DNA of 64,000 nt, taken from positions 1,736,001 through 1,800,000 of the forward strand of contig VJWM01000025.1 in assembly GCA_010909165.1 (NCBI GenBank). Reading direction: 5' to 3'. Positions within the stretch are counted from its first letter, which is position 1; each line of letters opens with the position of its first letter. The notes under the pieces are model-generated. The model had not been told where the DNA came from. It worked only from the letters and a program-made list of their open reading frames with translations, and made no database searches. Source of the stretch: Anthoceros angustus. Its lineage: Eukaryota; Plantae; Anthocerotophyta. A program made the translations under genes and the position numbers. Below, in pieces: positions 34,632-49,075 of this stretch.

Positions 34632-36553
34632 TTACGATCCCTGGCACAAGAGGTTGTAAATCAGGAGGGTGATGCCGAATTGAGGGCTTGTTCGAAGAAC
34701 CCGGACGATGCTCCCTTTGAATAAGGATTTTGGTCCCTCATCCAACCATAGTTGCCGGAGACAGGCCCAAGCGTCCTTCACAGGTTCGTCGCCCGGTGCA
34801 GGTTCTTTCTGCAAGAGAGAGCACACCAATTATCTGACATGTCCAGGATGTTTCAGACTGAGTCCAGGATGTTTCAGATTGAGTGCACCTCGATGGGCAA
34901 TGGGCTACAAACCTGCAGACGTGTCTTGATAATGTCAAAAGGAGTCACCAACACCGTTGCGGGGATGGCAGCAATGAATCCAGCAGCAAAACTGTGCTCG
35001 GGATACGTCTGTCGCAAGAACGTGTACAAGGAAAAGAAGAGTGCTGAACTTGGAATGTCTCGGGCCATTGTGATGCCAGCTCCAGTGTAGAGACCTTGCA
35101 CTCCTAAATCTCTGACCACATCCCAAGCATTCTTCGGAGCACCTTCTTTGGATTGCGTCTGCAGTCTGACCTTCACCATCTCCATGGGATTGGTGAAAAC
35201 AACCTGCGAGAAGCCTCCACCCCCTCCTGCAATGAATTCTAGAGCCCAAATCCGGGCGCCGGGCAACCTGCTCTCCAACATTCCCAAAAGCAGCTCGTTC
35301 ACTGTAAGCTTCATGGCCTGCAATTTTACCAATGCAACTGTTCATCACAACCACAAAGCAGAACAGCCAGCTTCCTACCAGTTAAAGGATGCTATGCATC
35401 AGAAAACCAAGAAACAAACAGAGCCATGTACCTTTTCTGGAGCAATACCAACAAGCTGTGGAATCAATCCATCATAGAGCGAAGCTGGTCCTTCTTTGGC
35501 CACAAGTTTCTTAAAGCAGTCAAACTCGTCCTTGTACGCTGGCTCTTCCCCCTCTTTCTGTGGAAACGAAGGAAAGACGAAAGCCAACGGAGGTTCAGGG
35601 ACCAGAAACACCAAGACACCCAACAAGTGGACTCATCAATCAGTCACAAGCATACAGGAACGTACCGAGCGCTGAGCCTGCATACGTGTTTTAATAGTAT
35701 CCAGTGGATGCACGAAGGCGGCTCCAACGGCCCCTGCTATTCCCCCACCGCTAAAGTGCTGGAAAGCTCTGGTCAGCAACTGTGAAAGACCTGCTGCAGC
35801 TGGCTCTGCACCAGCAAAAGACGCAATTGCTGGAGCAGCAACTGAGCTCACACAGGTACCAATAGCCGAAGATGCCACAGAGTCAAGTGCTCTCACTGTT
35901 ACCATATCAGTAGACAATAACGATGGTGCAGCACCCACTGGCAGCGTAACAAACTCCAAATTGCCACTGTTGTCGGAACTATCTCCAATGATGGCCGCCC
36001 TGCAGCCAATAGCTTGCCCTTGAACTGCCTGCTCCATCTCGAACCGTACTTGCTGCTCAAGCATTGACTCCAAGACCGCAACATCCTCTGACCCTGGAGC
36101 GTCATAGACAGAAGCGGTAGTGGCCTCTCCTAAAGCCGGAGAAGACAGCATCAGAGAGGCACCAGCCGACACTGCTGCCGCTACCACCGCTCCCGGCTGC
36201 AGCCATGCGTCTGACCTAACCTCGCCGGTAGAGTGCACCCCCAACTGCTCCTTCTCCCCTAGCACTCTGCTGCCAGAGCCTGCCGCACAGTCCCCCGAAG
36301 AAGCCGAGGATGTGCCGCAAACCGCAACTCTACCGCCGGGCTTACACAGCATACTGCTCTTTCCACATCCGCACACTTTTGTCCAGGCTAGCTCTCGCAC
36401 CTCGCATCTTTTGCTCACCACCTTCCCCGTCAAAAAAACAGCCGAAGCCCGGCTTCCAGGACACTCCAACTCTGTAGCCGCAACTCCACCAGCTCCCACC
36501 CGCAGGCCAAGCATCTGGCCTGAAGCCGGGTGAGAGCTGGCACAAATTGCCAT
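34632..36553 (-). CDS. Mitochondrial carrier family protein of the aspartate/glutamate carrier (AGC/aralar/citrin) type with a long N-terminal extension; exons 36553-35666, 35557-35432, 35317-34913, 34808-34632
   Basis: Three Px[D/E]xxKxRxQ repeats ([33 protein letters not shown]) plus the AGC-typical [44 protein letters not shown] and [17 protein letters not shown]. Splice phases are consistent. Confidence 0.9.
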
Positions 36554-37955: not shown

Positions 37956-40900
37956 CTTCGGGTGGTGGAGGGACCTGGAGTCCAGAGCTCGATGTTGGTG
38001 CCGGTTGCTGAGGGTTTCCCTGTGGGACGTTCCTCCCCATGCCTGGAGACAGTCGACAGCCAACAGCACAGTCAGTTTACACATATATATGGAGTTCGCC
38101 CGCACAAACTACTGCTCATCAGTCCACATACTGAGCTGAAAAAACGACTGGGGACATTGCGCTGTCAGGAAATGGAAATTTGGGGTTAGAATGGAAAGAA
38201 CGTACCTGGGCCAGGAGCATGGGCATGTTGCTCGCCATGAGCCGGGGGACCGGCTCCCCTTGCAGGAGGAGCCGCGGGGACGATGTCCAGAGCCTGGTAC
38301 AGTTCCAGCAACCTCATCGGGTACTTGTCGCGGAGTTCCATGTAGTCAGGCAGGCCAGAGAGGAGGCAGTCGCGGGCGTTGGGATCCAAAGCCACCACAA
38401 CGGCATCTTGGAGAACACGGGACTCGGCGTGCTTGGCAGCCTCCCAGATCCTGAGGGCGGTTTCCGGTCCCAAAATCCCCAGCAGATACTGCTCGCAGAT
38501 AGCTACGGCCGCGGGGAGTTCGTAGTCGTACGATGCCTTGAGCATGTGGGTGCCGTGGGTGTTGAGCAAGGCGGGGTCGATTGTCCCTGTGTGGGCGTAG
38601 CCGAGTAAACCTAGCACCACCGGGTGCATAACCTCATCAACAAGCTCTCTCACCTCGGGGATGGAGCTGACCAGCAAGGCGGTCCTGACGAATTCGGCGT
38701 GCGCCCTCTGCCGCCGAGACATGGCCAGCAGTAGTTAGGTTACATACAAACAACACAAGTGAGAAGACACAGGACTGAAATGAGAAGACACAGGACTGAA
38801 ATGGGAAGACACAGGACTGAAATGAGAAGACACGGGACTCGGGGAAGACACGGGACTCGGGGGAAGACACTGGACTCGGGGAAGACACTGGACTCGGGGA
38901 AGACACGGGACTCGGGGAAGACACGGGACTCGGGGAAGACACGGGACTGGGGGAAGACACAGGACTCTGGGAAGCTGGAGGTAGATGGAGGTAGGTGGCG
39001 GTACAACACGCGTGAGAACACACGAGACTGTTTAAAATTTGAACGGCGGAAGGAGGTACGCACGCAGCAACGTTAACACATGTCAGAAAACACAGGACTG
39101 AAATGTGACTGGGAGGAATGAGTCACCACTTACCAGGACGTCTCTCTGGGCGCGAGAGAGGGAGCCGTCTCCTGAGCCGACGGGAAGATGCGAAGTTGGT
39201 GCCAAAAACATCTCTCTAACCACTGGAGCATAGTGGCGTTGCAAAATCGCCAGTCGCTGGGTTTCGGTACCTGCACTCCTCATTCTAGCATCCAGCACTT
39301 GGATATACTCGGCCTGAGTGAGTCCGGCAGCAGACGCTGAGAAGTAGTCCATGGCATAGAGCTGCTGCACTCGTTCCAGTAGTTCCGCATGGGGATGAGC
39401 ATGGGCACCAGCCGGCAATCCCATGGGAGCAGCCGGTCTAGGAGGCGGCGGTGTCGGAGGCCTGGGAAGAGGAGCAGGTCTGGGAACCGACAAGGGACCG
39501 AGTCCTGGATCAAATTCATCCGGGGCGCTGCTGGCGCCGGCATCGCTAGGGTCCTGATGCGGAGGCTGACGAGGAGGTTGTGCATGCGGAAAAGGAGAAG
39601 GAAAAGGAGTTTGATCCTGATCCTGGTCCCGAGGAGGATCCATATCCTGCATTGCAACCCCAGGCGCGGCAGCATCAGGCCGAGCCGGCGCCTTCCGCTT
39701 GGATCGTGCCCTCGATACTGGCGGCGGGAAGAGCTGGAGCGTAGGAGGAGCTCGACCGGGTACACCTGGTCTTGGATCCGCCTGCTGCTGCTGCAATCCA
39801 CCCAGAGTGCCTGGCCCAACGTCCCGGAACTGGTATGCAACCCCATTTCCCCCCTGTGGTTGTGGCTGGCTGCTCATGCCGCTGGTGCCATCGGCACTGG
39901 CCCATGAGTAGGTGTTGCCAGTGGCTGGTGCATCCTGACGAGCTCTGCTGCGATGTGCTCTCCGACCTGCTCGGGATGATGGGCCGTTGACGCTAGCGAA
40001 AGTTCCGTCGGGATTGCGGAGGCGCGGTGTCGATGTTCCACCTCCTCCCCCTCTTCGTCCTCGCCGACTCCGTGGCTGGGTAGCCTGTGCCTGCCCCGCC
40101 TGCTCTTCACCCTGACCCTGCTGTGCCTGCTGTGCTTCCTGTCCTTGTGCTTGGGGCGGGTCATGAAGCATCTGAGCAAAGTGGGCCCGAGCCTGACTGG
40201 CCACCCAAGACCGACGAGCCCTTCTCCGACTCCGCCGCTCTTCTTCGCACTCCACCTGAGCCAGTTGATCCTGCATGGCCGGCCCATAGCCATGGGCATC
40301 GCCATTCTCCTCCCTGTAAGTGGATGTCCGCACAGAATCATGGCAAGTGAGAGGAGCCACTCCCGTCCGGAGATGCTTGGCTGCAGGCTTAGCTGTGGAG
40401 CTGGAGCTGGGGGGCAAAGTGGCCATGGGGTCATGAGGAATGGTATGGGGAAGGAAAGGAATGGGTGGTGGAGGGGAAGGCATGGGGGAGGCAGAGGAAT
40501 CGGCATGGTAGCTGGGACTGGGCTGCTGGGCAGCAGCAGATGCACATGCAGCAACGAAAGCCCTGGACAAAGCTATTAGATGGTCCAGGATCGCCTGAGT
40601 CTGGGCAGGAGGCACGGGAACAGCTGGTGGCTGGGGAAGGGGATATTGGCTACGGGGAACATGAAGCTGTTGGCCAGCTTGGGGAATTGGGACAAGTGGG
40701 TGAAGCTGGTGGTGTGGGATTGGGTGAAGAGGGCGGAATGGAACAACTGGGTGGCATGGAACAACTAGGTGTGGAAGTGGAACTCGGCAGGGAATGTGGG
40801 GGATGTGGGGGATGTGGGGGATGTGGGGAACCTGGGGAATGTCGGGGATGCGAGGGATGTGGGGAATGTAAGGGATGTGGGGAATGTGGGGAAGAGGCTC

Positions 40901-41779
40901 GGGCATGGGAGCGGGAGTGGTGCCATTAGAATTCAAAGGGAAAGTGATCTCACCATCCGGCCCCCACCTCAGGGTAGGCCTGGGACGCCCGGGACCTCGG
41001 ACAAGAGGAAGAGTAAGATCCAGAGGTGGGATCGGTGGGTACAGCTCGTTGGCTCGGGCTCGGGCTTCGGGTGAGTAACGGGCTTGGGATTCGGCTGCAA
41101 AAAGGGCTCTGGCCCTGTTCGCAGCTGCCGTCACTCGGGCCAGTAGCTCGGAAGCTGGCATGGGGTGATATGCTGGGGCCACATGCTCAGGTGGAGGGTC
41201 TGGGAGCTGGTAAGACGGTAGCAGATGAAGAGGAAGGAGGTGATGCTGGGGAGGCGGGTGGAAATGGGGAGGAAGCTGCTCATGATGAAGAGGTGGCAAC
41301 ACATGAGGGGGAGGAAGAAATTGGTGAGGTGGAGGATCTGCTGGGAGGTGATAAGACGGTTGCAGATGAGCAGGGGGCAGGTCATGCTGGGGAGGCGGGT
41401 AGAAGTATTCTGCAGGCAGCTGATGATCAAGAGGAGGTAATAGATGCGGGGGAAGGAGTGGAGGAGGAGCAAGGGGAACAGGTGCAACGGGGATAAGAGG
41501 AATGGGTTCTTGGTCCAGATCATCTTCTACTTGTAGATCTTCTAGATCCGGAGTCCAATATGGTGGGGGAGGAGGAGGCATGACATGGCTAGGGGGGCCG
41601 CGGCGAATCTCGGGTATAGGGAATATGGTGCTCGGGGAGGTAGGGTCACGGGGACCTTGATTCTCGTTGCGAATGGAGTACGGGAACTGTGACTCGTCGA
41701 CGTCGCCGTCGTAGCCACCGCTAGCACCACCGCCGCTGCCACTGACTCCGGGGTTAATATCATCTTGACCAGACCCCAT
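37956..41779 (-). CDS. Large Pro/His-rich disordered protein with a C-terminal BTB/POZ-BACK-like domain; exons 41779-39134, 38707-38206, 38042-37956, terminal exon uncertain
   Basis: The 909-codon ORF ends [23 protein letters not shown] at a GTAAGT donor and splices in phase 0 to [12 protein letters not shown]...[11 protein letters not shown]...[22 protein letters not shown]...[21 protein letters not shown], giving a continuous SPOP/BPM-like BTB-BACK pattern. Confidence 0.75.
38752..38970. repeat. Compound intronic minisatellite (20-mer x3 grading into 18-mer x~8)
   Basis: gaagacacaggactgaaatg(a/g) x3, then gggaagacac(g/t)ggactcg x~8, sharing a gaagacac-ggact core. Confidence 0.9.
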
Positions 41780-41819
41780 GCTGCCTTCCCCTTGAGGCCT
41801 GCATAGCGCCACGCCCAGT

Positions 41820-46815: not shown

Positions 46816-47984
46816 CCTTATTACAAGTGGGCACGTTTAAGGGCCTTGCACCAGGGCGGCCTTGAAAGGGCGTGTTCTCGTGCGGGAGGTAGAGATGTAC
46901 CAGTGAGGGGTCCCAAAGAGGCCTACTGCGGGCCGGATATCACAGCTATGGAGAAAAGGGATCCCGAAGAGCTTCACAAGTGGCAAAGATGCTGCTATGA
47001 TCCGCTCCGCCTACTCTTCAAATGTCCTTGATGCTTGGCTTCGAACCCCAGTTGCAATCAATGGGCTGAAACGTTACATCACCAAGGGGGCTGCAATTGA
47101 GACAACGACATTTGAGATTCGCGCTCTCGTTCTTTCATGTCTATGTCTAGGTGGGCCCAAGCTGGGTTATGCAACCTTCTCGGGCCCAAAGTGGGTTATG
47201 CAACCTCGAAGTGTTAGACTTGCGTTCTCGTTCTTTCATGTACATCTATGTTCAACTGGGCCCAAAGTGGGTCATGCAGCCTTCTCAAGCCCAAAATAGC
47301 TCATGCGGCCTTCTCGGGCCCAAAATGGGTTGTGCAACCTCGAAGATTACGCGTTCCGCTTCTTTCACACCTACGGATGCTTAGGGTTCCTTTCCTTGAA
47401 ATTTCTTTAAATTTCATTACTATGTTGTGGAACCTTAGCATTCCCCCTTCTTTCATACATGCATTGTGAAACCTTCTCGTTTCCACTCTTTCATTCATAC
47501 CCTATTCTTTTCTAGCTGTTCTTTCATCTCTATGTTATGCAACCCTAATTCATGTTCCCATTTTTTGTGTCATACCTATGAAATTGTGTTAGCATTCTTT
47601 CAGCTCTTAGTTGTATAAATTTCATGTTAGTTATGGAAGTACAATTTCATAACACACCATTTTGTTATGAACATAAAAATAGAGCAATCTTTATTGAAAG
47701 AGGAGAGATGGGTAAGCTCATCTACCATAAGACACCATAGGGAAAGCCCAAGAGTCACAAGTTATGCTATTTATTGGATGAAGAAATTTTCTAATCATAT
47801 CCTACCAACCTGTCACTTTGTATCATATATTTATTATTCATTGCATATTATGTATAATTTTATATCCTATATATTGATATGTATATATATTACATATATG
47901 CAATTCTTATACCATCACTCAGTATGAAATACTTATGTCTTAATGATAATTATCACAATATAACACATTCACTTCGATCATCTC

Positions 47985-49075
47985 CGCTTGGCTGGTGGAA
48001 TACTTTTCAGGGAAAAGAAACCAATGCTTTGAAGTCATTTCTCAACGTTTCAACCTCATTCCTATGCAGACTTCTGGTGGCTGACTCTATGCCGCAAGAG
48101 TTTCATAAAAGTGCTGCAAAGTATCAAGTTATATCTGCTCTCCATTCTCGTATCCTAAGGCTGGTTTGGAAAAGCCCAGGCGTGCTAGAACGATATAGGT
48201 GCGCTCTCTGGCAAATACTACGCACTACTCTTTCAAACGCGGACAGATGGAATGGTTTCTTTGAAGCTATGGGCTGCCCCTCCTGCACTATTTGCGGCTT
48301 GGGACAAGAGCTTACCAGTGAGCATATCTTTTACAGCTGCCCCCTTGCACAAAAAGTCTGGTTGCAGATCCTCTCATGGATTCGTAAGATCATGAAGGAC
48401 ATGAATCTAATTATATCTAAGTTCATTGTGCTCTTTAGATTAGATGGTGATTTTGGAAAAGCCTGGCTATCAAAACAACTGTGGCGAGCGCTTCAGGCCA
48501 CTACCATTCATGTCCTTTGGGTCCACTGGACGGCCGTGATTTTCAAGGGAGATGATCCTGCAATGTGCTACAAGCTGCTCTGCCAAATTTGGGCGTCTGT
48601 ACTTTTCACTGCTATTGGATTGCTTAGGGATGATCCGAAGCGATTCAAATCGAGGGATTCATGGCAAAACACTGGTCTCTTGATTTCTCTCCCCTAGGAC
48701 ACTGATGAGAGAAGATTCGGGCTGCGCATGGAGAGGGATGGAGCCGAGTGAAGTGATCTCGGCTTTGTGGTACCATCACTGCCCGTTTTTATGTCCGCCA
48801 TAACTGGTGGAGCGTCTGGGTGGTGTGCTCAGCAAACTGTATGATATGAAGTATGAGGTGGTGGGGGGAGTTTGAGTAAGGGGCTCCTTGGGGGCCTGAC
48901 ACTTTGTTCCTATTTCTGTGATTTGTGCTGGCCGCGATGTGATGGCCCAGATTGGTTGGTCCCTTGCTCGATTTGCAGACTCTGTTCGACCCCTGCTTTT
49001 TGCTCCTGGTGTGGTGAGCTGTACGATCACATCCATTTATATAGTGTTGTATAAATTCGTCTACAAAAACGTTCA
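47985..49075 (+). mobile_element. 5'-truncated LINE (L1/Tx1-like): ORF2 C-terminus with zf-RVT zinc knuckle, plus 3' UTR
   Basis: VWKSPGVLERYRCALWQIL...CTICGLGQELTSEHIFYSCPLAQKVW...LWVHWTAVIF is the typical zf-RVT and C-terminal region of plant LINE ORF2. The RT domain is absent. Confidence 0.85.

What the first reader, a model, noticed from the sequence alone, without database searches (positions are those of the whole stretch)
34632..36553. AGC/aralar-type aspartate-glutamate carrier with a plastid-like bipartite leader in a land plant
Seen: the carrier domain keeps the AGC hallmarks (PQLxGxAPEKAxKLTVN, SQVxFTNP, RDxP, RxSPQFGxTL). The ~255-aa N-terminal extension has no EF-hands. It opens Ser/Ala/Cys/Arg-rich and later has a hydrophobic stretch ending in a signal-peptidase-like site ([22 protein letters not shown]). 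Established, to my knowledge: animals and fungi use AGC in the malate-aspartate shuttle, Arabidopsis has no clear AGC ortholog and its UCP1/2 carry Asp/Glu, and some plant MCF members are plastid-targeted. Inference: an AGC-clade carrier retained in seed-free plants and retargeted to the chloroplast envelope or thylakoid, a potentially undescribed amino-acid transport route.
Basis: partly seen in the sequence, partly recalled or inferred. Interest (0 to 1): 0.72.

Follow-up and report, generated by a model that had tools for sequence, protein, structure and literature searches.

The report
AGC-type carrier with signal-like leader
A real four-exon plant gene encodes a membrane transporter of the aspartate/glutamate-carrier type, which reviews say plants lack; it carries a conserved leader that looks like an organelle sorting signal, but where the protein sits in the cell is still unproven.

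Summary
Window 34632-36553 (minus strand) is a 4-exon gene with GT..AG introns of 108, 114 and 104 nt. It encodes a 531-aa mitochondrial-carrier-fold protein.

The carrier has the AGC substrate contact points (Lys-Lys / Arg-Asp / Arg). It is 43-46% identical to animal Aralar and fungal Agc1, and 38-39% to GC-like carriers. In a tree it falls inside a strongly supported streptophyte clade, which groups with characterised AGCs rather than with GC-like carriers.

Orthologues occur in zygnematophyte algae, Klebsormidium, mosses, liverworts, ferns, Selaginella, Ginkgo and Taxus. None was found in angiosperms. "Seed-free plants" should therefore read "all streptophytes except angiosperms".

The roughly 255-aa extension is family-specific and mostly disordered. 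It always contains a signal-peptide-like segment: a basic edge (twin-Arg in mosses, gymnosperms and chlorophytes), an uncharged core, then small-x-small followed by an acidic residue.

This fits a bipartite plastid (thylakoid or envelope) leader. It also fits a mitochondrial intermembrane-space sorting signal. Localisation and substrate remain untested. I rate the plastid reading about 0.45 and the mitochondrial reading about 0.35.

Verdict: a new variant of a known kind, of moderate interest.

The parts
34632..36553 (-). Whole coding span of the AGC-type carrier gene (4 exons, 531 codons plus stop)
   Evidence: The same exon layout is found in the relative L001.
35666..36553 (-). Exon 1, residues 1-296: the whole N-terminal extension plus carrier helix 1
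   Evidence: Pfam Mito_carr matches residues 263-295 only.
36209..36553 (-). Residues 1-115: Ser/Ala/Gly/Cys-rich region upstream of the hydrophobic core. First basic residue is Arg18. Residues 1-119: 8% acidic and 11% basic.
   Evidence: composition over residues 1-119; boundary.
36353..36373 (-). Residues 61-67, 'CGCGKSS': a short C-x-C-G-x-x-S motif shared with mosses and liverworts; unexplained
36128..36208 (-). Residues 116-142: signal-peptide-like uncharged stretch. It has an Ala/Val-rich core and a Ser/Pro-rich tail, and ends A-L-G directly before Glu143.
   Evidence: The same n-h-c form is present in all streptophyte orthologues.
36017..36091 (-). Residues 155-179: the only confidently predicted element of the extension, an amphipathic helix (pLDDT about 90)
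   Evidence: It aligns with the 'LE...ELE.EIQ' stretch of orthologues.
35804..35878 (-). Residues 226-250: second, weaker Ala/Ser/Val-rich stretch just before the carrier. It is not conserved in Ginkgo, Taxus, Adiantum or Selaginella.
35666..35767 (-). Residues 263-296: carrier helix 1 with matrix-gate motif PLDTIK
35558..35665 (-). Intron 1 (108 nt, GT..AG, phase 0)
35432..35557 (-). Exon 2, residues 297-338. It ends on contact-point-I Lys338 (codon 35432-35434).
35318..35431 (-). Intron 2 (114 nt, GT..AG)
34913..35317 (-). Exon 3, residues 339-473. It contains Lys341 (35309-35311), the matrix-gate motifs PMEMVK and PFDIIK, and contact point II Arg424-Asp425 (35057-35062).
34809..34912 (-). 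Intron 3 (104 nt, GT..AG). It holds two tandem copies of a 17-nt unit, 21 nt apart.
34632..34808 (-). Exon 4, residues 474-531 plus TAA. It contains contact point III Arg512 (34692-34694). The protein ends about 10 residues after the PQFG motif.

Best explanation
What it is. The gene encodes a six-helix carrier of the aspartate/glutamate-carrier (AGC) branch of the mitochondrial carrier family. It belongs to an orthologue group found throughout streptophytes and lost in angiosperms.

Transport (inferred). The central binding site is that of AGCs: two Lys on helix 2, Arg-Asp on helix 4 and Arg on helix 6. The three matrix-gate motifs are intact. The most likely activity is therefore alternating-access transport of aspartate and glutamate. 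The cytoplasmic-gate charges on helices 2 and 6 are lost in the whole streptophyte clade, and there is no C-terminal helix. Coupling or regulation may therefore differ from animal AGCs.

Leader (inferred). The 255-residue extension has no folded domain. Its conserved part is a signal-peptide-like segment ending small-x-small before an acidic residue. I read the extension as a bipartite leader:
- an N-terminal organelle-import part;
- then an export or stop-transfer signal, cut by a type I signal peptidase near Gly142/Glu143.
After cleavage, the remaining roughly 110-residue acidic linker and both carrier termini would lie on the trans side of the membrane.

Destination (inferred, lean only). 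A plastid membrane, either thylakoid or inner envelope. There such an export signal would be needed to reproduce the mitochondrial orientation after import into the stroma.

What is shown: the gene model, the family and clade, the contact points, the conservation and form of the leader, and the taxon distribution.
What is inferred: substrate, cleavage and organelle.
For: Gene and fold:
- Gene model and Mito_carr repeats.
- The Ginkgo orthologue folds as a canonical carrier, pLDDT above 90, and matches UCP1 and the ADP/ATP carrier by Foldseek.

AGC identity:
- Contact points K338/K341, R424-D425 and R512 match 86 of 113 aligned AGC-type proteins, including named Aralar1/2 and fungal agc1. GC-like proteins have Ile at the third point. 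The review gives the same definition (PMC6769469).
- Careful tree: a clade at 100/99 support holds opisthokont AGCs together with the green clade (96/96). The streptophyte clade has 100/99 and the embryophyte clade, which includes the window protein, has 99/95.

Leader:
- The form is conserved in 29 relatives. In 15 the uncharged stretch ends exactly small-x-small followed by Asp or Glu; most others have A-x-A a few residues earlier.
- Twin-Arg sits directly before the core in mosses, Ginkgo, Taxus, Bryopsis and a second chlorophyte-like protein.
- The two chlorophyte leaders give the only NCBIfam hits, both to Tat-signal models, though below cut-off.
- A profile of the extension finds only this family among 1.84 billion representatives.
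- The extension is disordered in AlphaFold models. It diverges fast: 35% identity against 72-83% for the carrier exons, in comparison with L001. That is the behaviour expected of a targeting or linker sequence.
- A thylakoid signal is defined as charged / hydrophobic / A-x-A, with RR for Tat. The peptidase Plsp1 also acts at the envelope (PMC10267391).
- The N-terminus is uncharged and Ala/Ser/Gly-rich up to Arg18, and similar in mosses and Closterium.
Against: - No localisation, processing or transport data exist for any member.
- Every characterised AGC is mitochondrial.
- The window copy has no Lys or Arg within five residues of the hydrophobic core (the nearest is Arg at -8), and no RR.
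- The region upstream of the core is 115 residues here and up to about 225 in relatives. It is 5-16% acidic, so it is longer and more acidic than textbook stroma-targeting peptides.
- That region keeps a C-x-C-G motif across bryophytes, which a disposable peptide should not.
- Land-plant leaders give no Tat-model hit.
- Identity to AGCs (43-46%) is no higher than the AGC-GC identity reported in the review (46%). The tree has only GC-like and amoebozoan outgroups, not the whole carrier family.
- No obvious role is known for Asp/Glu exchange across the thylakoid.
Confidence: 0.45

Rival explanations
1. Mitochondrial AGC. The protein sits in the inner mitochondrial membrane like all known AGCs and serves a malate-aspartate shuttle in non-flowering plants. 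The leader would be a matrix-targeting presequence followed by a hydrophobic stop-transfer (intermembrane-space sorting) signal. That signal would be cut by the inner-membrane peptidase, or kept as an anchor.
For: - Clade membership with mitochondrial AGCs.
- Some relatives have Arg-rich N-termini: Selaginella has 20% Arg in the first 40 residues and Bryopsis 17%.
- Basic residues, then a hydrophobic core, then a small-x-small cleavage site before an acidic residue also describe mitochondrial bipartite presequences of the cytochrome b2/c1 type (my knowledge, not tested here).
- Plant ADP/ATP and phosphate carriers are known to carry cleaved N-terminal extensions (my knowledge).
- In Arabidopsis UCP1/2 carry out Asp/Glu exchange (PMC6769469). 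That could explain a dispensable AGC in angiosperms.
Against: - Carriers reach the inner membrane from the intermembrane space with both termini already on that side. Animal AGCs place a 320-residue N-domain there without any presequence. A conserved export-type signal is therefore not needed (my knowledge).
- The window N-terminus has one Arg in its first 33 residues.
- A-x-A with Ala at -1, together with twin-Arg in several lineages, is the thylakoid or bacterial pattern.
Confidence: 0.35
2. Uncleaved signal-anchor. The hydrophobic stretch is a seventh transmembrane helix. The 115-225-residue basic region upstream stays on the matrix or stroma side as a functional part, for instance regulatory or metal-binding through the Cys motif. 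This reading is compatible with either organelle.
For: - The upstream region is long and keeps a C-x-C-G-x-x-S motif in mosses, liverworts and the window.
- One extra helix gives a consistent topology with the carrier in its usual orientation (inference).
- The Ginkgo model shows the core as a helix, though at low confidence.
Against: - The polar Ser/Pro tail and the small-x-small site before an acidic residue are conserved where a plain anchor needs none.
- The upstream region is only 37-39 residues in Ginkgo and one alga-like relative, and it lacks the Cys motif in all tracheophytes and algae.
- The region is predicted to be disordered.
Confidence: 0.15
3. Carrier of the AGC branch with a shifted activity. 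It could be a uniporter, or a transporter of another acidic or neutral amino acid, because the cytoplasmic gate network is degenerate.
For: - Helix 2 reads N-E-L-L-L where AGCs have N-D-F-V-R. Helix 6 reads Y-N-L-L-C where AGCs have Y-E-L-L-Q-R. This holds in all streptophyte rows.
- The stem branch of the clade is long, 0.76 changes per site.
- Weak cytoplasmic networks are associated with net transport rather than strict exchange (my knowledge of the carrier-symmetry analyses).
Against: All five charged contact-point residues are unchanged. Yeast Agc1p also does uniport yet remains an Asp/Glu carrier (PMC6769469).
Confidence: 0.2
4. The leader is not part of the protein. Instead it would be an untranslated region, a mis-joined exon or an annotation artefact.
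For: Some database models of orthologues are truncated or frameshifted: Physcomitrium at 356 aa, Klebsormidium at 285 aa, and Selaginella isoform X1.
Against: - The frame is open for 296 codons from the first ATG after a stop.
- The start and architecture are conserved in L001.
- Full-length single-ORF transcripts from several lineages include the leader.
Confidence: 0.02

Closest known systems
Animal AGC1/AGC2 (aralar, citrin; SLC25A12/13) and yeast Agc1p
   Same: - Same branch of the carrier family in the tree.
- 43-46% identity over the carrier domain.
- Identical charged contact points KK / RD / R.
- Intact matrix gate.
- A long N-terminal extension precedes the carrier domain.
   Different: - No EF-hand domain; the extension is unrelated, disordered and signal-like.
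- No C-terminal helix after helix 6.
- Cytoplasmic-gate charges are lost.
- Identity is lower than between yeast and human AGCs (57-58%, PMC6769469).
- Location and activity are untested.
Glutamate carriers GC1/GC2 (SLC25A22/18) and GC-like fungal carriers
   Same: They form the sister group. Contact points I and II are shared, and they also lack EF-hands (PMC6769469).
   Different: GCs lack the Arg at contact point III, which the window protein has. Identity is only 38-39%. They fall outside the AGC-plus-green clade.
Arabidopsis UCP1/UCP2 (functional Asp/Glu exchangers of flowering plants)
   Same: The proposed substrates are the same (PMC6769469).
   Different: They belong to a different branch of the family, with R-N at contact point II and no extension. 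They are not orthologues: no angiosperm protein appears among the best 120 hits.
Plastid-located carrier-family members (Brittle1/pANT1, TAAC/PAPST1, SAMC1, FOLT1)
   Same: They set the precedent that this family can be sent to the plastid envelope or thylakoid by an N-terminal extension (PMC7565455).
   Different: - They are nucleotide or cofactor carriers.
- As far as I know their leaders are simple transit peptides without a signal-peptide-like second part.
- None transports amino acids.
Bipartite thylakoid-lumen transit peptides (Sec or Tat type, cut by the thylakoid processing peptidase Plsp1)
   Same: They share the charged edge, hydrophobic core and A-x-A end, and RR is present in several orthologues (PMC10267391).
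   Different: - The leader here precedes a six-helix membrane protein, not a soluble lumen protein.
- The first part is much longer and more acidic than usual.
- The window copy lacks the basic edge.
- Tat-model hits are absent in land plants and below cut-off in chlorophytes.

Membership tests
Mitochondrial carrier family (SLC25, Pfam PF00153) | Three tandem repeats of about 100 residues matching Mito_carr | tested here: met
   Matches lie in exons 1+2 (repeat 1), exon 3 (repeat 2 and the start of repeat 3) and exon 4 (rest of repeat 3), with E-values from 1e-7 to 2e-25.
Mitochondrial carrier family (SLC25, Pfam PF00153) | P-x-[DE]-x-x-[KR] on helices 1, 3 and 5 (matrix gate) | tested here: met
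   PLDTIK, PMEMVK and PFDIIK.
Mitochondrial carrier family (SLC25, Pfam PF00153) | [FY]-[DE]-x-x-[KR] on helices 2, 4 and 6 (cytoplasmic gate) | tested here: not met
   Helix 2 reads N-E-L-L-L, helix 4 Y-T-F-L-R and helix 6 Y-N-L-L-C. The motif is degenerate in all streptophyte orthologues. It is also partly degenerate in AGCs, so this does not exclude family membership.
Mitochondrial carrier family (SLC25, Pfam PF00153) | Six-helix bundle fold | tested here: met
   Tested on the Ginkgo orthologue, which is 72.5% identical in the carrier domain. AlphaFold gives pLDDT above 90 for residues 190-467. Foldseek matches UCP1 and the ADP/ATP carrier with E-values of 1e-9 to 1e-10. The window protein itself has no reference as a spliced sequence, so it was not folded.
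Aspartate/glutamate carriers (AGC; SLC25A12/13, Agc1p) | Contact points: two Lys (I), Arg-Asp (II), Arg (III) | tested here: met
   K338, K341, R424, D425 and R512. The definition comes from PMC6769469.
Aspartate/glutamate carriers (AGC; SLC25A12/13, Agc1p) | Groups with characterised AGCs to the exclusion of other subfamilies | tested here: met
   100/99 support for a clade of opisthokont AGCs plus green-lineage proteins, rooted on GC-like carriers. Limitation: no outgroups from the other roughly 25 subfamilies could be fetched.
Aspartate/glutamate carriers (AGC; SLC25A12/13, Agc1p) | Orthologue-level identity (yeast against human 57-58%) | tested here: inconclusive
   43-46% to Aralar and agc1. 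That is close to the AGC-GC figure of 46% given in the review.
Aspartate/glutamate carriers (AGC; SLC25A12/13, Agc1p) | N-terminal EF-hand regulatory domain (animal members) | tested here: not met
   The precomputed Pfam lists show only PF00153 for all streptophyte orthologues. Yeast Agc1p also lacks Ca-binding motifs, so this feature defines the animal members, not the whole subfamily.
Aspartate/glutamate carriers (AGC; SLC25A12/13, Agc1p) | Aspartate/glutamate exchange activity; inner mitochondrial membrane location | not testable with these tools
   This needs proteoliposome assays and localisation experiments.
Bipartite thylakoid transit peptide (Sec/Tat type) | Hydrophobic core followed by a polar tail ending A-x-A | tested here: met
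   residues 116-142 end A-L-G before Glu. Orthologues mostly have A-x-A before Glu or Asp. The definition comes from PMC10267391.
Bipartite thylakoid transit peptide (Sec/Tat type) | Charged edge directly before the core (RR for Tat) | tested here: not met
   The window has no Lys or Arg within five residues; the nearest is Arg at -8. The feature is met in mosses, Ginkgo, Taxus and two chlorophyte-type relatives (RR), and partly in ferns (KR/RK).
Bipartite thylakoid transit peptide (Sec/Tat type) | Stroma-targeting first part: uncharged start, hydroxylated, few acidic residues, usual length | tested here: inconclusive
   The first 40 residues are 15% Ser/Thr, 5% acidic and 5% basic, which fits. 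But the part upstream of the core is 115 residues long and 8% acidic. No predictor was available, and predictors are unreliable in bryophytes anyway (PMC11581415).
Bipartite thylakoid transit peptide (Sec/Tat type) | Match to Tat-signal profile models | tested here: not met
   There is no hit for the window or other land-plant leaders. The two chlorophyte-type leaders hit TIGR01409 and TIGR02811 below cut-off.

The most novel reading that the evidence does not exclude
Streptophytes other than flowering plants keep an AGC-type acidic-amino-acid carrier that has been moved into a plastid membrane. A Tat/Sec-type bipartite leader would set it in the mitochondrial orientation, with the matrix face towards the stroma. 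This would be the first amino-acid carrier of this family in a plastid. It would also be a transport route for aspartate and glutamate that flowering plants have lost, alongside other plastid traits lost in angiosperms.
Probability: 0.4. Interest if true: 0.75.

Novelty: new variant of a known kind. Interest (0 to 1): 0.55.

Why it matters
Reviews of this transporter family state that plants have no close AGC homologue and that Arabidopsis uses UCP1/2 instead (PMC6769469). This gene shows that the statement holds only for flowering plants. A well-conserved AGC-type carrier runs from zygnematophyte algae to gymnosperms.

Little is known about amino-acid transport across plastid membranes. DiT2.1 is described as the only characterised chloroplast amino-acid transporter in Arabidopsis (PMC5948301).

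If the leader does send this carrier to the plastid, it would add a new route and a new way of inserting a six-helix carrier. If it is mitochondrial, it would mean that non-flowering plants run an animal- or fungal-type, possibly electrogenic, Asp/Glu exchange. Its loss would then mark a change in redox shuttling at the origin of angiosperms.

Either outcome is directly testable in Marchantia, Physcomitrium or Anthoceros.

Tried and rejected
- **Exact database look-up.** Searching with the exon-1 ORF did not find the protein itself. Only a 35%-identical relative (P0001) and exon-1 fragments of orthologues turned up.
- **Full-length searches.** The spliced 531-aa protein has no reference, so it was used only inside scripts. 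Database tools received single exons by reference, or orthologues by id.
- **Extension profile search.** A profile of the extension (alignment A1) was run against 1.84 billion representatives. It returned 19 hits, all from the same family or its exon fragments. The extension is therefore not a module found elsewhere.
- **Family scans of ten leader segments.** Pfam gave only noise at E>=0.019. NCBIfam gave two sub-threshold Tat-signal hits, for chlorophyte-type relatives only.
- **AlphaFold on the extension.** There is no folded domain. A regulatory domain like the EF-hand domain of animal AGCs is therefore rejected.
- **Second hydrophobic stretch as an obligatory membrane helix.** Rejected. 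It is absent in Ginkgo, Taxus, Adiantum and Selaginella.
- **ER signal peptide.** Rejected. The core starts 37-225 residues from the N-terminus.
- **Synteny between the window and L001.** There is none beyond the gene itself.
- **PDB sequence search with exon 3.** It returned only UCP, GTP/GDP and ADP/ATP carriers. No AGC carrier-domain structure was found.
- **Pfam on 20 other long ORFs of the window.** The aim was to name the organism. Only LEA_2 and zf-RVT matched. The source is a plant, but the species is unknown.
- **Organism from the tree.** The window protein sits as its own embryophyte lineage, outside mosses, liverworts and tracheophytes. Together with the roughly 100-nt introns this suggests a hornwort, but I could not verify it.
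- **Literature searches for a description or localisation.** Nothing was found. No supplementary file of PMC10027655 is held as text.
Full report
**1. What is in the sequence**

On the minus strand between 36553 and 34632 lies a four-exon gene. The exons are 36553-35666, 35557-35432, 35317-34913 and 34808-34632. The three short introns (108, 114 and 104 nt) all begin GT and end AG. The ATG at 36553 is the first ATG after an in-frame stop.

The spliced product has 531 residues. Pfam finds only the mitochondrial-carrier repeat, spread over the end of exon 1 (residues 263-295) and exons 2-4, with E-values down to 2e-25. No EF-hand family appears even at E<=0.1. A PROSITE-type EF-hand pattern is also absent.

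**2. Gene-model support from relatives**

The exact protein is not in the 5.8-billion-protein collection. The nearest relative of the extension is P0001, from a Logan assembly (sample SRR33208241, locus L001). Its locus has the same four-exon layout. Its carrier exons are 72-83% identical to the window, but exon 1 is only 35% identical. It has the same start, 'MA.CA.S.P'. There is no synteny beyond the gene.

Full-length orthologues that are encoded as single ORFs on short contigs, and are therefore transcripts, align colinearly across all three exon junctions.

**3. Which carrier it is**

Two searches were run, with the Physcomitrium orthologue and with the carrier domain of the Ginkgo orthologue. 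Both return first a tight set of streptophyte proteins:
- mosses, including Ceratodon and Sphagnum;
- the liverworts Calypogeia, Riccia and two Marchantia species;
- the fern Adiantum;
- Selaginella;
- Ginkgo and Taxus;
- the algae Closterium, Mesotaenium and Klebsormidium.

After a gap from E=1e-84 to 1e-65, only animal Aralar1/2 and fungal Agc1 proteins follow. No angiosperm protein is among the best 120 in either search.

The window carrier domain shows the following identities:

| Compared with | Identity |
|---|---|
| Ginkgo | 72.5% |
| a moss | 69.5% |
| Klebsormidium | 55.5% |
| Bryopsis | 44% |
| named Aralar / agc1 proteins | 43-46% |
| GC-like fungal carriers | 38-39% |

The review of amino-acid carriers defines AGCs by two lysines at contact point I, Arg-Asp at II and Arg at III, and notes that glutamate carriers lack the Arg at III (PMC6769469). 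The window protein has K338, K341, R424, D425 and R512. This is the same pattern as 86 of 113 aligned proteins, including the named AGCs. A group of short Mortierellomycota proteins has Ile at III and so behaves as GC-like.

A careful maximum-likelihood tree was rooted on those GC-like proteins. Support values were:
- 100/99 for a clade that unites opisthokont AGCs with a green-lineage clade;
- 96/96 for the green clade (Bryopsis plus streptophytes);
- 100/99 for streptophytes;
- 99/95 for embryophytes.

The window protein sits in the embryophyte clade as a lineage of its own, beside mosses, liverworts+Selaginella and Ginkgo+ferns. The limitation is that carriers of the other subfamilies could not be fetched as outgroups. 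The test is therefore AGC against GC-like and amoebozoan relatives, not against the entire family.

**4. How the carrier part differs from known AGCs**

The three matrix-gate motifs are intact. The charged residues of the cytoplasmic gate are lost in every streptophyte row. Helix 2 reads N-E-L-L-L where AGCs have N-D-F-V-R, and helix 6 reads Y-N-L-L-C where AGCs have Y-E-L-L-Q-R. The protein stops about ten residues after the PQFG motif, so there is no C-terminal helix.

From what is known of carrier symmetry (my knowledge), a weak cytoplasmic network goes with net transport rather than strict exchange. The transport mode may therefore differ, even if the substrates are the same.

The Ginkgo orthologue folds as a canonical six-helix carrier with pLDDT above 90. 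Its best structural matches are UCP1 and the ADP/ATP carrier. No AGC carrier-domain structure was found in the PDB by sequence.

**5. The extension**

All land-plant and zygnematophyte orthologues carry an extension of 190-470 residues. Mean column identity across it is only 22%. It evolves much faster than the carrier.

It has no homologue outside this family. A profile search of 1.84 billion representatives gave 19 hits, all orthologues or their exon fragments.

It is predicted to be disordered. In the window, only residues 155-179 form a confident helix. In Ginkgo, residues 1-186 are below pLDDT 50.

The one feature kept everywhere is an uncharged stretch of 21-29 residues. It has an Ala/Val/Leu-rich core, a Ser/Pro-rich tail and a small-x-small end. 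In 15 of 29 proteins an acidic residue follows directly; most of the rest have A-x-A a few residues earlier.

Basic residues usually precede the stretch:
- Twin-arginine occurs in mosses, Ginkgo, Taxus, Bryopsis and a second chlorophyte-like protein, whose leader reads like a classical Tat signal.
- Ferns have KR or RK.
- Liverworts have a single Arg or Lys.
- The window has none within five residues.

Among ten leader segments scanned, the only NCBIfam hits were the two chlorophyte-type leaders against Tat-signal models, and both were below cut-off. Pfam gave nothing meaningful.

A second Ala/Val/Ser-rich stretch just before the carrier is missing in four lineages, so it is unlikely to be a membrane helix.

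**6. Reading the leader**

The charged / hydrophobic / A-x-A form is that of substrates of type I signal peptidases. It is the definition of a thylakoid transfer signal, with RR marking the Tat route, and the plastid peptidase Plsp1 also works at the envelope (PMC10267391).

*Evidence that favours a plastid*
- The start is uncharged and Ala/Ser/Gly-rich in the window, mosses and Closterium.
- Twin-Arg is scattered widely across the tree.
- By inference, a carrier imported into the stroma would need an export signal to push a long N-terminal tail across the membrane and adopt the mitochondrial orientation. A mitochondrial carrier needs no such signal.

*Evidence against, or unexplained*
- The part upstream of the core is long (37 to about 225 residues; 115 here) and 5-16% acidic.
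- It keeps a C-x-C-G-x-x-S motif in mosses, liverworts and the window.
- The window lacks the basic edge.
- All characterised AGCs are mitochondrial.
- Mitochondrial bipartite presequences of the cytochrome b2/c1 type have the same general form (my knowledge).

Targeting predictors were not available, and they are reported to lose reliability quickly in bryophytes and algae (PMC11581415). I therefore lean to a plastid membrane (about 0.45) over the mitochondrial inner membrane (about 0.35). The remainder goes to an uncleaved anchor or dual targeting.

**7. What is known**

The review literature says that no close AGC homologue has been found in plants, and that Arabidopsis UCP1/2 carry aspartate and glutamate (PMC6769469; PMC7020223; PMC7565455). 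I found no paper that describes this streptophyte group or localises a member.

The databases hold the orthologues under automatic and inconsistent names. The Selaginella alleles appear as 'Aralar2 isoform X1' and as 'adenine nucleotide transporter BT1'. The Physcomitrium protein appears as 'calcium-binding mitochondrial carrier protein-like'.

The gene family is thus visible in databases but undescribed. I file it as a new variant of a known kind: an AGC-branch carrier with its own signal-like leader and an altered cytoplasmic gate, present in streptophytes except angiosperms.

**8.

The taxon statement needs correction, because gymnosperms keep the gene and only angiosperms lack it. The chloroplast retargeting is a reasonable but untested hypothesis with a serious mitochondrial rival.
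- Grouping outside AGC is not the case.
- Angiosperm orthologues were not found.
- A mitochondrial location with an untranslated leader: the leader is clearly translated, and the location is open.

**9. Other points**

The window is from a plant (LEA_2 and zf-RVT ORFs). The tree position and the roughly 100-nt introns suggest a hornwort, but this was not verified.

Noticed in passing
window 36353-36373 (-), residues 61-67 of the carrier precursor: A short motif C-[GSA]-C-G-x-x-S ('CGCGKSS' in the window) recurs upstream of the hydrophobic core in mosses, Sphagnum-like proteins and liverworts (11 of 16 bryophyte rows). It is absent in ferns, gymnosperms, Selaginella and zygnematophytes. That is odd for a part thought to be a disposable targeting peptide. 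Ferns instead show 'NGG-V-x-C' about 45-50 residues in, and the window has 'GGRVAVC' at residues 72-78. From memory, this resembles an RbcS-type stromal processing site.
   Followed up: partly
window 39083-41812 (-): An open frame of 909 codons in the GC-rich block next to the carrier gene. It is very rich in Pro, His and Gln, with runs such as repeated I-P-H-I-P-H. It has no Pfam match. It is probably a large exon of a proline-rich protein of unknown kind.
   Followed up: partly
window 22128-22889 (+): An ORF of 253 aa with a LEA_2 (late embryogenesis abundant / NDR1-like) domain, E=1.2e-14. This is a plant-type gene and supports a plant origin for the window.
   Followed up: no
window 47879-48697 (+): An ORF of 272 aa with a zf-RVT domain (zinc-binding region of reverse transcriptases), E=4.7e-8. 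It is probably a remnant of a non-LTR retroelement, and it lies in an AT-rich stretch.
   Followed up: no
window 34841-34878 (-), inside intron 3 of the carrier gene: Two tandem copies of a 17-nt unit (TCTGAAACATCCTGGAC), 21 nt apart.
   Followed up: no
whole window: Composition alternates between GC-rich blocks (0.54-0.59; 1-6 kb, 12-26 kb, 38-44 kb, 62-64 kb) and AT-rich blocks (0.36-0.43; 10-12 kb, 28-34 kb, 44-48 kb). The carrier gene sits at the edge of an AT-rich block.
   Followed up: no
database orthologues P0020/P0141 (Selaginella), P0002/P0128 (Physcomitrium), P0021 (Klebsormidium), P0022 (Mesotaenium): Several public gene models of this family look wrong or truncated. Selaginella isoform X1 has an out-of-frame C-terminus. 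The Physcomitrium models lack the hydrophobic leader segment. The two algal models start at the carrier domain. Automatic names are inconsistent: Aralar2, BT1, 'calcium-binding'.
   Followed up: partly
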